From: Euprymna scolopes
Taxonomy: Eukaryota
DNA: 64,000 bases
Strand: one strand, 5' to 3'
NCBI GenBank assembly: GCA_053919585.1
Contig: CM132793.1
Of this stretch, positions 40,240 to 64,000 are shown one piece after another. The first letter of the stretch is position 1. Each line of letters begins with the position of its first letter. The position numbers were made by a program, and so were the translations under genes. The notes under the pieces are model-generated. The model was not told the origin of the DNA, ran no database searches, and was given only the letters and a program-made list of their open reading frames with translations.

Positions 40240-40534
40240 GTCATGCAAATTTGTAGAGTAAATTCTTTCCTACAGAGAAAACAATGCTATCAAGATCTGC
40301 AGTCTCAAAAACTGATGTGAAACGGCTCCCAAAATACAAGAACAGTATAATGTTGTTAAAAAGTGTTCTCTTTCTACAGTTAAGAACAGATTGAAGGAAT
40401 TTAATTTGTGATGCTGTGTTTCAAGACGTAAGCCAATGATTTCTGTAAAAACAGAAAGCGTCGTCAGATGCAATGAAGATCATAACTTTTCATATTTGTC
40501 AAAAGTGATTTTTAGAGACGAAAGCATGTTCAAT
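40240..40534 (+). mobile_element. Tc1-family transposase relic, N-terminal half up to the first catalytic Asp
   Basis: Reads ILSYRENNAIKI..ETAPKIQEQYN..CSLSTVKNRLKEFNL*CCVSRRKPMISVK, then NRKRRQ-like after a frameshift, then KVIFRDESMFN. This matches the Tc1 pattern S.STVRRRL...ARKKPLIS...V.(W/F)SDESKFN. Confidence 0.8.
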
Positions 40535-43500
40535 AACATGTTCAATAACATGTTCAATAACATGTTCAATAGCATGTTCAATACCATGTTCAATAACATG
40601 TTCAATAGCATGTTCAATAACATGTTCACTAGCATGTTCAATAACATGTTCAATAACATGTTCAATAACATGTTCAATAACATGTTCAATAACATGTTCA
40701 ATAACATGTTCAATAACATGTTCAATAACATGTTCAATAACATGTTCAATAACATGTTCAATAGCATGTTCAATAACATGTTCAATAACATTTTATTGAA
40801 CATGTTCAATAACATGTTCAATAACATGTTCAATAACATGTTCAATAACATGTTCAATAGCATGTTCAATAACATGTTCAATAACATTTTATTGAACATG
40901 TTCAATAACATGTTCAATAACATGTTCAATAACATGTTCAATAGCATGTTCAATAGCATGTTCAATAACATGTTCAATAACATGTTCAATAACATGTTCA
41001 ATAACATGTTCAATAACATGTTCAATAACATGTTCAATAACATGTTCAATAACATGTTCAATAGCATGTTCAATAACATGTTCAATAACATGTTCAATAA
41101 CATGTTCAATAACATGTTCAATAGCATGTTCAATAACATGTTCACTAGCATGTTCAATAACATGTTCAATAACATGTTCAATAACATGTTCAATAACATG
41201 TTCAATAGCATGTTCAATAACATGTTCAATAGCATGTTCAATAACATGTTCAATAACATGTTCAATAACATGTTCAATAACATGTTCAATAACATGTTCA
41301 ATAGCATGTTCAATAGCATGTTCAATAACATGTTCAATAACATTTTATTGAACATGTTCAATAACATGTTCAATAACATGTTCAATAACATGTTCAATAG
41401 CATGTTCAATAGCATGTTCAATAACATGTTCAATAACATGTTCAATAACATGTTCAATAACATGTTCAATAACATGTTCACTAGCATGTTCAATAGCATG
41501 TTCAATAACATGTTCAATAACATGTTCAATAACATGTTCAATAACATGTTCAATAACATGTTCAATAACATGTTCACTAGCATGTTCAATAGCATGTTCA
41601 ATAACATGTTCAATAACATGTTCAATAACATGTTCAATAACATGTTCAATAACATGTTCAATAACATGTTCAATAACATGTTCAATAACATGTTCAATAG
41701 CATGTTCAATAACATGTTCAATAACATGTTCAATAACATGTTCAATAACATGTTCAATAACATGTTCAATAACATGTTCAATAACATGTTCAATAACATG
41801 TTCAATAACATGTTCAATAACATGTTCAATAACATGTTCAATAGCATGTTCAATAACATGTTCAATAGCATGTTCAATAACATGTTCAATAACATGTTCA
41901 ATAACATGTTCAATAACATGTTCAATAACATGTTCAATAGCATGTTCAATAACATGTTCAATAACATGTTCAATAACATGTTCAATAGCATGTTCAATAA
42001 CATGTTCAATAACATGTTCAATAACATGTTCAATAACATGTTCAATAACATGTTCAATAGCATGTTCAATAGCATGTTCAATAACATGTTCAATAACATT
42101 TTATTGAACATGTTCAATAACATGTTCAATAACATGTTCAATAACATGTTCAATAGCATGTTCAATAGCATGTTCAATAACATGTTCAATAACATGTTCA
42201 ATAACATGTTCAATAACATGTTATTGAACATGCTCAATAGCATGTTCAATAGCATGTTCAATAGAATGTTCAATAGCATGTTCAATAACATGTTCAATAA
42301 CATGTTCAATAACATGTTCACTAGCATGTTCAATAACATGTTCAATAACATGTTCAATAACATGTTCAATAACATGTTCAATAACATGTTCAATAACATG
42401 TTCAATAACATGTTCACTAGCATGTTCAATAACATGTTCAATAACATGTTCACTAGCATGTTCAATAACATGTTCAATAGCATGTTCACTAGCATGTTCA
42501 ATAACATGTTCAATAACATGTTCACTAGCATGTTCAATAACATGTTCAATAACATGTTCAATAACATGTTCAATAACATGTTCAATAGCATGTTCACTAG
42601 CATGTTCAATAACATGTTCAATAACATGTTCACTAGCATGTTCAATAACATGTTCAATAGCATGTTCAATAACATGTTCAATAACATGTTCAATAACATG
42701 TTCAATAACATGTTCAATAACATGTTCAATAACATGTTCAATAACATGTTCAATAACATGTTCAATAACATGTTCAATAGCATGTTCAATAGCATGTTCA
42801 ATAACATGTTCAATAACATTTTATTGAACATGTTCAATAACATGTTCAATAACATGTTCAATAACATGTTCAATAGCATGTTCAATAGCATGTTCAATAG
42901 CATGTTCAATAACATGTTCAATAACATGTTCAATAACATGTTCAATAGCATGTTCAATAACATGTTCAATAACATGTTCAATAACATGTTCAATAACATG
43001 TTATTGAACATGCTCAATAGCATGTTCAATAGCATGTTCAATAGCATGTTCAATAGCATGTTCAATAACATGTTCAATAACATGTTCAATAACATGTTCA
43101 CTAGCATGTTCAATAACATGTTCAATAACATGTTCAATAACATGTTCAATAACATGTTCAATAACATGTTCAATAACATGTTCACTAGCATGTTCAATAA
43201 CATGTTCAATAACATGTTCACTAGCATGTTCAATAACATGTTCAATAGCATGTTCACTAGCATGTTCAATAACATGTTCAATAACATGTTCACTAGCATG
43301 TTCAATAACATGTTCAATAACATGTTCAATAACATGTTCAATAACATGTTCAATAGCATGTTCACTAGCATGTTCAATAACATGTTCAATAACATGTTCA
43401 CTAGCATGTTCAATAACATGTTCAATAGCATGTTCAATAACATGTTCAATAACATGTTCAATAACATGTTCAATAACATGTTCAATAGCATGTTCAATAA

Positions 43501-61500: not shown

Positions 61501-64000
61501 ACATGTTCAATAACATGTTCAATAACATGTTCAATAGCATGTTCAATAACATGTTCAATAACATGTTCAATAACATGTTCAATAACATGTTCAATAACAT
61601 GTTCAATAACATGTTCAATAGCATGTTCAATAACATGTTCAATAACATGTTCAATAACATGTTCAATAACATGTTCAATAACATGTTCAATAACATGTTC
61701 AATAACATGTTCAATAACATGTTCAATAACATGTTCAATAGCATGTTCAATAACATGTTCAATAACATGTTCAATAGCATGTTCAATAACATGTTCAATA
61801 ACATGTTCAATAACATGTTCAATAACATGTTCAATAGCATGTTCAATAACATGTTCAATAACATGTTCAATAACATGTTCAATAACATGTTCAATAACAT
61901 GTTCAATAACATGTTCAATAACATGTTCAATAACATGTTCAATAACATGTTCAATAGCATGTTCAATAACATGTTCAATAACATGTTCAATAGCATGTTC
62001 AATAACATGTTCAATAACATGATCAATAACATGTTCACTAGCATGTTCAATAACATGTTCAATAACATGTTCAATAACATGTTCAATAACATGTTCAATA
62101 ACATGTTCAATAACATGTTCACTAGCATGTTCAATAACATGTTCAATAACATGTTCAATAACATGTTCAATAACATGTTCAATAACATGTTCAATAACAT
62201 GTTCAATAGCATGTTCAATAACATGTTCAATAACATGTTCAATAGCATGTTCAATAACATGTTCAATAACATGTTCAATAACATGTTCAATAACATGTTC
62301 AATAGCATGTTCAATAACATGTTCAATAGCATGTTCAATAACATGTTTAATAACATGTTCAATAACATGTTCAATAGCATGTTCAATAACATGTTCAATA
62401 ACATGTTCAATAACATGTTCAATAACATGTTCAATAGCATGTTCAATAACATGTTCAATAACATGTTCAATAACATGTTCAATAGCATGTTCAATAACAT
62501 GTTTAATAACATGTTCAATAACATGTTCAATAGCATGTTCAATAACATGTTCAATAACATGTTCAATAACATGTTCAATAACATGTTCAATAGCATGTTC
62601 AATAACATGTTCAATAACATGTTCAATAACATGTTCAATAACATGTTCAATAACATGTTCAATAACATGTTCAATAACATGTTCAATAACATGTTCAATA
62701 ACATGTTCAATAGCATGTTCAATAACATGTTCAATAACATGTTCAATAGCATGTTCAATAACATGTTCAATAACATGATCAATAACATGTTCACTAGCAT
62801 GTTCAATAACATGTTCAATAACATGTTCAATAACATGTTCAATAACATGTTCAATAACATGTTCAATAACATGTTCACTAGCATGTTCAATAACATGTTC
62901 AATAACATGTTCAATAACATGTTCAATAACATGTTCAATAACATGTTCAATAACATGTTCAATAGCATGTTCAATAACATGTTCAATAACATGTTCAATA
63001 GCATGTTCAATAACATGTTCAATAACATGTTCAATAACATGTTCAATAACATGTTCAATAGCATGTTCAATAACATGTTCAATAACATGTTCAATAGCAT
63101 GTTCAATAACATGTTCAATAACATGTTCAATAACATGTTCAATAACATGTTCAATAACATGTTCAATAACATGTTCAATAACATGTTCAATAGCATGTTC
63201 AATAACATGTTCAATAACATGTTCAATAACATGTTCAATAGCATGTTCAATAACATGTTCAATAACATGTTCAATAGCATGTTCAATAACATGTTCAATA
63301 ACATGTTCAATAGCATGTTCAATAACATGTTCAATAACATGTTCAATAACATGTTCAATAACATGTTCAATAACATGTTCAATAACATGTTCAATAACAT
63401 GTTCAATAACATGTTCAATAGCATGTTCAATAACATGTTCAATAACATGTTCAATAACATGTTCAATAACATGTTCAATAACATGTTCAATAACATGTTC
63501 AATAACATGTTCAATAACATGTTCAATAACATGTTCAATAACATGTTCAATAGCATGTTCAATAACATGTTCAATAACATGTTCAATAACATGTTCAATA
63601 ACATGTTCAATAGCATGTTCAATAACATGTTCAATAACATGTTCAATAACATGTTCAATAACATGTTCAATAGCATGTTCAATAGCATGTTCAATAACAT
63701 GTTCAATAACATGTTCAATAACATGTTCAATAACATGTTCAATAACATGTTCAATAGCATGTTCAATAACATGTTCAATAACATGTTCAATAACATGTTC
63801 AATAACATGTTCGATAGCATGTTCAATAACATGTTCAATAACATGTTCAATAACATGTTCAATAGCATGTTCAATAGCATGTTCAATAACATGTTCAATA
63901 ACATGTTCAATAACATGTTCAATAACATGTTCAATAACATGTTCAATAACATGTTCAATAGCATGTTCAATAACATGTTCAATAACATGTTCAATAACAT
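40523..64000. repeat. Satellite DNA array of the 12-bp unit AACATGTTCAAT, ~1950 units, running off the window end
   Basis: Direct observation. Common variants are AGCATGTTCAAT and ...TTCACTAGC...; there are rare locally inverted units and one visible indel, an extra A at 59843-59845. Confidence 0.99.

What the first reader, a model, noticed from the sequence alone, without database searches (positions are those of the whole stretch)
40240..64000. A >23 kb satellite apparently born from the catalytic motif of a Tc1 transposase
Seen: the unique flank translates as a Tc1 transposase relic (STVKNRLKE..RRKPMIS..KVIFRDES) and runs with no junction sequence into the array as GAC GAA AGC ATG TTC AAT, where AGCATGTTCAAT is the first unit. 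Known: Tc1 transposases have a DESKFN-type motif at the first Asp of the DD34E triad. Inference: the monomer is these 12 bp of transposase CDS amplified about 2000-fold in place, so the birthplace of the satellite is preserved.
Basis: partly seen in the sequence, partly recalled or inferred. Interest (0 to 1): 0.85.

Follow-up and report, generated by a model that had tools for sequence, protein, structure and literature searches.

The report
Satellite grown from four transposase codons
A tandem array of more than 23 kb in a mollusc genome repeats 12 bases that sit at this same position in thousands of copies of a Tc1 transposon, and it starts in register inside a broken copy, so it is a clean but not unprecedented case of satellite DNA born from a dead jumping gene.

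Summary
A 12-bp tandem array of about 1,956 units fills 40523-64000 and runs off the window. It has one indel in 23.5 kb.

It abuts a 256-bp in-frame relic of a Tc1-type transposase at 40267-40522. The relic has two stop codons, lacks its 5' part, and has about 12 nt missing.

Contigs of four public DNA runs, under three organism labels, show that 40267-40535 is a very high-copy dispersed repeat. Other copies match the window through 40535 and then continue GGCTAGGCAGTGATGGTAGGCAGTACGTCC. So the family reads DESMFNRLGSDGRQYV, and AGCATGTTCAAT plus the next A is family sequence at exactly this place. A 13-nt overlap by chance has P of about 4e-8.

- **Shown:** the unit comes from Tc1 coding sequence.
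- **Likely, not proven:** birth at this very locus. The far end lies outside the window and the junction was not confirmed in independent reads.
- **Correction:** the unit is the four codons after Asp-Glu, not the catalytic Asp codon.
- **Extra:** the dominant AAC variant forms an 8-bp palindrome that folds into hairpins; the Tc1 form does not.

Satellites derived from transposons are already well documented. The scan also noted a similar Tc1-codon satellite 3.55 Mb away (s1-268945, unchecked).

The parts
39013..40266 (.). Flank left of the relic. The part that was laid on reads (39700-40239) is single-copy.
   Evidence: one X1 contig at depth about 18 covers 39700-40380 with 5 differences. 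Depth jumps about 1000-fold from 40267 on.
40267..40522 (+). Relic of a Tc1-type transposase, lacking its 5' part. It covers roughly codons 60-150, from the end of the paired-like DNA-binding region up to Asp-Glu of the first DDE position, in one reading frame.
   Evidence: Translation. Pfam HTH_Tnp_Tc3_2 on 40316-40408: E=0.012, profile 15-44. Very high-copy repeat in 4 runs, and other copies continue upstream of 40267 with ..AAATCTGGTCGTCCTAGAGTTAC, which reads KSGRPRVT. Atlas features are nearest to Tc1/mariner clusters, scores below 0.9.
40313..40315 (+). In-frame stop TGA. Nearly all laid copies (about 98% by depth) read A at 40313, giving AGA.
   Evidence: 40313 T>A, 10728 of 10886 depth in X1.
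40409..40411 (+). In-frame stop TGA. The family majority reads CGA, so this is a CpG-to-TpG change.
   Evidence: 40409 T>C, 27767 of 43320 depth in X1; loose end CGAGGATATGTT...
40449..40461 (+). Site where the window copy lacks about 12 nt found in other copies. The family reads ..GTAAAGAACAGAAAGCGCCGTCTGGACTTCGTCAG = VKNRKRRLDFV.
   Evidence: loose ends behind 40449 and before 40461 in all four runs.
40517..40519 (+). GAC, the presumed first catalytic Asp of the DDE triad. It lies 3 nt outside the repeated unit.
   Evidence: Sequence. The assignment rests on the Tc1 motif D-E-S-x-F-N..GSDG from general knowledge. No profile hit was obtained for so short a piece.
40523..40535 (+). 13-nt overlap AGCATGTTCAATA. 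It is both the Tc1 family sequence (Ser-Met-Phe-Asn codons plus the first base of the next codon) and the first unit of the array.
   Evidence: loose ends 'behind 40535' in X1, X3, X6 and X8. Chance probability 3.7e-8.
40523..64000 (+). 12-bp satellite array of about 1,956 units that runs off the window end.
46524..49300 (.). Recent tandem duplication of a 1,392-bp block (116 units) inside the array. About 1,368 bp differ at only 2 positions, and 600 bp are identical (46535-47134 = 47927-48526).
59843..59843 (+). The only indel in the array, one extra A.

Best explanation
An old copy of a very abundant Tc1-type transposon decayed at this spot. It is about 7% diverged from the family's majority sequence and lacks its 5' part.

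Twelve bases of its transposase reading frame, AGCATGTTCAAT, code for Ser-Met-Phe-Asn directly after the Asp-Glu of the first DDE position. In the family sequence this unit is bracketed by the dinucleotide AG (AG-CATGTTCAAT-AG-G). The inferred steps are:
1. The 12 bases were duplicated, probably by replication slippage between the two AG dinucleotides.
2. A G-to-A transition at unit position 2 turned AGCATGTT into the perfect 8-bp palindrome AACATGTT.
3. Neighbouring units on one strand can then pair as hairpins with an 8-bp stem and a 4-nt loop. That should favour further slippage.
4. The AAC form came to dominate the array.
5. The array then grew to at least 23.5 kb, mainly by unequal exchange of blocks of hundreds to thousands of bases.

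Shown here: the unit is Tc1 family sequence at this position and in register. The array has block duplications. The AAC form folds far better than the Tc1 form.

Inferred: the slippage start, the causal role of the palindrome, and that this locus is the birthplace.

The array is non-coding DNA. Its 6,473-codon open frame follows trivially from a stop-free unit whose length is a multiple of three.
For: -: 40267-40535 is a very high-copy repeat (about 1,000-2,600 contigs laid per run) in four DNA runs under three organism labels. Copies match through 40535 and then read GGCTAGGCAGTGATGGTAGGCAGTACGTCC. No alternative letter is listed in 40502-40535. Upstream, other copies carry a GRPR motif.
- in-frame Tc1-like translation and a weak Pfam HTH_Tnp_Tc3_2 hit.
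- a 13-nt overlap has P=3.7e-8 by chance.
- the Tc1 form AGC makes up 24% of units throughout the array.
- (AACATGTTCAAT)x4 folds at -12.3 kcal/mol, z=-5.9, with 0 of 200 shuffles as good. The Tc1 form x4 folds at -4.0 kcal/mol, z=-0.4.
- a 1,392-bp tandem block is 99.85% alike, and there are several exact duplicate runs of 40-50 units.
- satellite words are present in a run of a second organism label (X6, share 0.22).
Against: - The far end of the array is outside the window, so resumption of the transposase (..AGGCTAGGCAGTGATGG) is untested.
- No independent contig was seen crossing from the relic into the array.
- Contigs of the same-species runs X1 and X3 hold none of the sampled junction and array words. 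Contigs collapse or drop short tandem repeats, so this is weak evidence.
- Other loci of the satellite could not be surveyed.
- The AGC variant shows no gradient towards the Tc1 end beyond a slightly higher share in the first 16 kb.
- The role of the hairpin is a correlation drawn from one array.
Confidence: 0.68

Rival explanations
1. The unit is derived from Tc1, but this locus is not the birthplace. The array arose in another copy of the family, or in several. It reached this relic by homologous or microhomology-directed repair, by conversion between Tc1 copies, or by segmental duplication that carried the junction along.
For: The family has thousands of copies that carry the same 13 nt, which gives many possible donors and targets. 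Another note in this scan reports a 17.4-kb satellite 'from five codons of a Tc1 transposase' 3.55 Mb away on the same piece (unchecked). Satellite words also occur in a run of another organism label.
Against: Nothing at this junction calls for a second step. The register is exact and there is no filler sequence. In one search almost no contigs continue from Tc1 copies into the satellite, so expanded copies are rare.
Confidence: 0.17
2. An unrelated, pre-existing 12-bp satellite was joined to a broken Tc1 copy, and the overlap is coincidental microhomology.
For: The consensus unit (AAC) differs by one base from the Tc1 sequence. End joining does use microhomology.
Against: A 13-nt exact overlap has P of about 4e-8. 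That is far beyond the usual 1-6 nt of microhomology. The Tc1 form is a standing 24% variant across the whole array. The 12-mer occurs nowhere else in the 40 kb of flank.
Confidence: 0.04
3. The array, or its junction with the relic, is an assembly or sequencing artefact, that is a misjoin at a repeat or a spurious low-complexity read.
For: Same-species short-read contigs X1 and X3 hold none of the sampled words of 40480-40900. No laid contig bridges 40535 into the satellite.
Against: The array has an ordered internal structure: exact 480-600-bp duplicates, a 1,392-bp tandem block, and one indel in 23.5 kb. Read noise would not give that. A 13-nt overlap is too short to cause a long-read misjoin. 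Satellite words are present in an independent run, X6. De Bruijn contigs commonly lose 12-bp tandem arrays, and the tool states that contigs show presence, not absence.
Confidence: 0.08

Closest known systems
Satellite DNAs derived from segments of transposable elements (reviews PMC9659126 and PMC12628747)
   Same: The monomer is homologous to a piece of a dispersed element, and the array sits next to or inside a decayed copy. The proposed growth is slippage followed by unequal exchange.
   Different: The recorded cases come mostly from terminal inverted repeats, LTRs and untranslated regions, with monomers of tens to hundreds of bases. Here the unit is only 12 bp and comes from the transposase reading frame of a Tc1 element. 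The Tc1/mariner entries in the part of that review's table that I read are a mariner inside a satellite, a MITE that carries a satellite, and whole-element Bari1 clusters. None is derived from coding sequence.
Microsatellites at a common site in ORF2 of mammalian L1 elements (Duffy et al. 1996), and ORF-derived satellites (PROsat from L1 ORF2, HinfI from CR1, CficCl-61-40 from a CACTA transposase), as listed in PMC9659126
   Same: Short or medium tandem repeats seeded at a defined place inside the coding sequence of a transposable element.
   Different: Those involve other element classes. The ORF2 microsatellites are short arrays. Here the array reaches at least 23.5 kb, and the left junction is preserved base for base against a family sequence read from thousands of copies.
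Tetris foldback transposon and its emerging satellite in Drosophila virilis (PMC4079207)
   Same: An element-internal repeat expands into a satellite, and intermediate stages are visible in the genome.
   Different: In Tetris the tandem repeats are already part of the element's terminal structure. Here the seed is a single-copy stretch of coding sequence.
Hairpin-forming simple repeats that expand by replication slippage (general knowledge, for example trinucleotide repeats and the Drosophila dodeca satellite)
   Same: A self-complementary unit gives intrastrand hairpins, the classical substrate for slippage.
   Different: The 8-bp palindrome here was created by one substitution in a 12-bp coding unit. 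No experiment links it to the expansion.

Membership tests
Tc1-type (Tc1/mariner superfamily) transposase relic | Tc1/Tc3-type helix-turn-helix DNA-binding domain (Pfam PF01498) | tested here: inconclusive
   piece 40316-40408 hits HTH_Tnp_Tc3_2 at E=0.012 and 16.3 bits, below the 31.5-bit cutoff, on profile 15-44. Piece 40412-40522 gives no hit.
Tc1-type (Tc1/mariner superfamily) transposase relic | GRPR-type motif between the two DNA-binding subdomains | tested here: met
   other copies continue upstream of 40267 with AAATCTGGTCGTCCTAGAGTTAC, which reads KSGRPRVT in the same frame. The window copy is truncated and lacks it.
Tc1-type (Tc1/mariner superfamily) transposase relic | First catalytic Asp in a D-E-S-x-F-N..GSDG context at the start of the DDE domain | tested here: inconclusive
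   The motif is read directly from the window plus the family continuation: VIFRDESMFN RLGSDGRQYV. It fits the Tc1 pattern known from the literature. Peptides this short gave no DDE_3 or PDB hit.
Tc1-type (Tc1/mariner superfamily) transposase relic | Second Asp and the Glu of the DD34E triad, terminal inverted repeats, TA target duplication | not testable with these tools
   The copy lacks its 5' end from 40267, and everything 3' of codon ~150 is replaced by the array or lies beyond the window.
Tc1-type (Tc1/mariner superfamily) transposase relic | Dispersed, multi-copy element | tested here: met
   1030-2638 contigs laid per run. Depth is 10^3-10^5 against about 18 for the flank, in runs of three organism labels.
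Satellite DNA | Long head-to-tail tandem array of one unit | tested here: met
   about 1,956 units of 12 bp, at least 23.5 kb, with one indel.
Satellite DNA | Genomic abundance, several loci or heterochromatic location, presence in independent data | tested here: inconclusive
   sampled words are held by X6 (0.22) and faintly by three other labels, but 0.00 in same-species contigs X1 and X3. Loci elsewhere in the genome could not be read.
Satellite derived from a transposable element | Monomer identical or nearly so to a defined segment of the element's family sequence | tested here: met
   the family reads AGCATGTTCAATA at 40523-40535. The array's second most common unit is identical to it, and the commonest differs by one transition.
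Satellite derived from a transposable element | Both array ends continue into the parent element in register (birth in place) | tested here: inconclusive
   The left end is in register with a 13-nt overlap. The right end is outside the window.

The most novel reading that the evidence does not exclude
A single G-to-A transition in a freshly duplicated 12-bp stretch of coding sequence created a perfect 8-bp palindrome. The hairpins it allows between neighbouring units were the trigger that turned an inert duplication into a runaway satellite.

This codon block of the Tc1 family would then be a recurrent seeding site. The second 'Tc1-codon' satellite noted 3.55 Mb away would be an independent birth from the same family.
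Probability: 0.15. Interest if true: 0.65.

Novelty: new member of a known kind. Interest (0 to 1): 0.45.

Why it matters
The first steps of satellite birth are rarely visible, because homogenisation erases the seed. Here three things can be read together:
- the parent sequence, known from thousands of copies;
- the exact left junction;
- the ancestral and derived unit variants, which coexist in the array.

The order duplication, then point mutation, then expansion can therefore be tested against sister species. It also gives a concrete, testable link between one substitution that creates a palindrome and the tendency to expand. The array probably lies in an intron of a rhodopsin-type receptor gene, so it may also bear on how genes tolerate very large intronic arrays.

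It does not change the general picture. Transposons are already an established source of satellites.

Tried and rejected
**Searches that found nothing**
- Protein route to intact family members. The search of 1.84 billion representative proteins with the 41-residue piece gave one hit, a 1,706-residue bacterial repeat protein that matches on low-complexity sequence. I rejected it as spurious.
- Two word-index searches found no candidates. One used the piece alone. The other used the piece as region 1-41 of a 330-residue reference, so that full-length transposases would qualify.
- PDB and Pfam searches with pieces of 23-41 residues and a 28-residue family reading found nothing.
- Exact-pattern DNA scans of metagenome contigs found nothing, for either a right-junction pattern or the family sequence across the site. 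Scans of viral contigs also found nothing.
- No other copy of the relic and no isolated 12-mer exists in the window.
- A literature search for the unit in six rotations found only primers.
- Earlier findings searched by sequence returned nothing.

**Ideas rejected**
- A Tc1 insertion into a pre-existing satellite. The junction lies inside the reading frame, not at an element end.
- An array of p53-type half-sites. Only 14 RRRCWWGYYY decamers occur in the array.
- A protein-coding reading of the 6,473-codon frame, which is a trivial consequence of the unit.

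Full report
**1. The observation**

Tandem Repeats Finder reports one array at 40525-64000, with period 12, 1956.2 copies, 95% matches and 0% indels. Parsed in register from 40523, it has 1,955-1,956 units:
- AACATGTTCAAT, 1,316-1,317 units (67%);
- AGCATGTTCAAT, 471 units (24%);
- forms ending in CACT, 78 units (4%);
- 15 units whose last four bases are inverted (ATTG);
- about 4% other single-base variants.

The only indel in 23.5 kb is one extra A near 59843. The array contains no N and runs off the window. The 12-mer does not occur in the 40.5 kb before it.

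The sequence at the edge is ...TTT AGA GAC GAA AGC ATG TTC AAT AAC ATG TTC AAT..., with the first unit at 40523-40534. Two details need changing: the consensus unit begins AAC, not AGC, and the repeated element starts at 40267, not 40240.

**2. The flank is a relic of a Tc1-type transposase**

One frame reads LSYRENNAIKICSLKN*CETAPKIQEQYNVVKKCSLSTVKNRLKEFNL*CCVSRRKPMISVKTESVVRCNEDHNFSYLSKVIFRDES and then enters the array.

Searched as separate pieces, 40316-40408 gives a weak hit to the Tc1/Tc3 helix-turn-helix domain PF01498 (E=0.012, below the curated cutoff). The second piece gives nothing. Language-model features of the second piece lie nearest to mariner and Tc1 transposase clusters, but with scores under 0.9, so this is only a lead.

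The stronger evidence comes from laying the contigs of four public DNA runs on 39700-40580 at 80% likeness. The runs are X1 and X3 of organism A, X6 of organism B and X8 of organism C.
- 39700-40239 is single-copy. One X1 contig at depth about 18 covers it with 5 differences.
- From 40267 to 40535, thousands of contigs lay down in all four runs. This stretch is therefore a very abundant dispersed repeat shared by related species.
- Other copies continue upstream of 40267 with ..AAATCTGGTCGTCCTAGAGTTAC, which reads KSGRPRVT in the same frame. That is the GRPR motif of Tc1-type transposases, so the window copy lacks its 5' part.

The family majority differs from the window at about 19 of 269 positions (about 7%). 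The differences include both stop codons: TGA at 40313 against AGA, and TGA at 40409 against CGA, the latter a CpG decay. The window copy also lacks about 12 nt at 40449-40461, where the family reads VKNRKRRLDFV.

**3.

In one search, the best-supported loose end on the 3' side lies 'behind 40535' in every run, with 38, 25, 16 and 42 contigs. Its consensus is GGCTAGGCAGTGATGGTAGGCAGTACGTCC. No alternative letter with a share of 10% or more is listed between 40502 and 40535. Two low-support rows of that table were not shown.

The family therefore reads GAC GAA AGC ATG TTC AAT AGG CTA GGC AGT GAT GGT AGG CAG TAC GTC, that is DESMFNRLGSDGRQYV. From general knowledge, this fits the Tc1 pattern around the first catalytic Asp (..DESKFN.FGSDG..). 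I could not obtain a profile-level hit for so short a stretch.

The first array unit plus one base (40523-40535, 13 nt) is thus ordinary family sequence, in frame and in position. To the left of 40523 the 12-bp periodicity stops at once. With the flank's base composition, a 13-nt overlap between an unrelated array and a break point has probability 3.7e-8. That remains negligible even across the 118 satellite notes made on this genome.

The direction of descent is clear. The Tc1 sequence is present in thousands of copies under three organism labels and encodes a conserved motif, so the satellite is the derived state.

**4. How it probably grew**

In the family sequence the unit is bracketed by AG (AG-CATGTTCAAT-AG-G). 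Slippage between these two dinucleotides would give the first 12-bp duplication. This step is inferred.

The dominant unit differs from the Tc1 form by G to A at position 2, which turns AGCATGTT into the perfect palindrome AACATGTT. Folded as single-stranded DNA:
- four AAC units form two hairpins, each with an 8-bp stem and a 4-nt loop, at -12.3 kcal/mol (z=-5.9; none of 200 shuffles as good);
- four Tc1-form units reach only -4.0 kcal/mol (z=-0.4).

That gives a plausible reason why the derived unit took over and why the array expanded. It is a correlation from a single array.

Later growth was by larger blocks. A 1,392-bp segment is tandemly duplicated at 46.5-49.3 kb with 2 differences in about 1,368 bp. 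Several runs of 40-50 units, rich in variant units, recur exactly at lags of 756-2,688 bp. Outside the two common variant sites, units differ from the consensus at under 1% per base. The relic is about 7% from its family sequence, so turnover in the array is much younger than the transposon insertion.

**5. What is not shown**

- The far end lies outside the window, so the prediction that the array is followed by the rest of the transposase is untested.
- No laid contig crosses from the relic into the satellite. Depth at 40540-40569 is near zero in X1, X3 and X8.
- A word search with 40480-40900 found 0.00 of the sampled words in the same-species contig sets X1 and X3. It found 0.22 in X6 (organism B) and 0.11-0.17 in three other labels.

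De Bruijn contigs often lose short tandem arrays, and the tool warns that contigs show presence, not absence. I therefore read this as lack of confirmation rather than contradiction. The ordered internal structure of the array argues against read noise. The raw-read runs of 2026 (X32-X35) could settle the matter, but the single read-laying run had been used.

Other loci of the satellite could not be surveyed. Attempts to fetch intact family members failed by every route: protein searches and exact DNA scans of metagenome and viral collections.

**6. Context**

The window is rich in transposon debris: reverse-transcriptase ORFs at 5746-7173 and 35.7-36.6 kb, and a mariner-like N-terminal ORF at 22045-22428.

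A rhodopsin-family receptor exon lies at 31932-32273 on the + strand. It matches 7tm_1 at E=3e-11, on profile positions 1-42 only. No further receptor exon is evident before the array. The relic and the array therefore probably sit in an intron of that gene, or downstream of a lone exon.

**7. Comparison with what is known**

Transposons as a source of satellites are well reviewed (PMC9659126, PMC12628747). Most recorded monomers come from terminal repeats, LTRs or untranslated regions. ORF-derived cases are also listed: L1 ORF2 microsatellites and PROsat, CR1 HinfI, and a CACTA transposase-derived satellite. The Tc1/mariner entries I saw in that table are whole-element clusters, MITE-borne repeats and a mariner inside a satellite. 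None is a short unit from the transposase reading frame.

This is therefore a new and unusually legible example of a known process, not a new kind of thing. The unit itself was not found in the literature.

The same scan noted a '17.4-kb satellite born from five codons of a Tc1 transposase' 3.55 Mb further along this piece (s1-268945). I could not read it. If it stems from the same family, the question of a recurrent seeding site becomes interesting.

**8. Verdict**

- The origin of the unit from Tc1 coding sequence is supported (about 0.9).
- Birth at this very locus is likely (about 0.7).
- 'Catalytic motif' is only approximately right.
- Interest is moderate.

Noticed in passing
window 31932-32273 (+): ORF matching the start of a rhodopsin-family 7TM receptor (Pfam 7tm_1, E=3.3e-11, profile 1-42 of 260). 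No further receptor exon was seen before 40.2 kb, so the Tc1 relic and the array of more than 23 kb may lie in this gene's intron.
   Followed up: partly
window 39700-40522: Contigs of RNA-labelled runs of the same species (X2, X4, X5) hold 18-39% of the sampled words of the single-copy flank plus relic. The region may be transcribed, for example as intron, or the runs may carry DNA.
   Followed up: no
window 40787, 40883, 41339, 42095, 42815 and 10 more: 15 units end in ATTG instead of CAAT, an inverted 4-mer. In five places this creates the perfect 16-bp palindrome ATTGAACATGTTCAAT. These units recur inside the duplicated blocks and serve as markers of block duplication.
   Followed up: partly
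window 22045-22428 (-): 127-residue ORF that looks like a mariner N-terminus (..KWHERFKEGRESVRDGERCGRSKT..). It gave no Pfam hit at E<=0.01 and is unrelated to the Tc1 family at 40267.
   Followed up: partly
window 5746-7173 (-) and 35659-36598 (-), 38371-38694 (-): Remains of non-LTR retrotransposon reverse transcriptase (RVT_1, E=6e-36 for the first). The 38.4-38.7 kb piece carries the C-terminal CRLCG..ETINH zinc-knuckle-like tail next to a masked N run.
   Followed up: partly
window 25155-25453: Tandem array of a 27-bp unit, 11.2 copies, 94% matches. It gives an open frame of repeated HPKILLVVN on the minus strand.
   Followed up: no
runs X25-X27: Two or three of the 18 sampled words of the junction and array stretch are held by runs labelled organism E, organism F and a marine metagenome. 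I do not know whether this reflects related molluscs, environmental DNA or chance simple-repeat matches.
   Followed up: no
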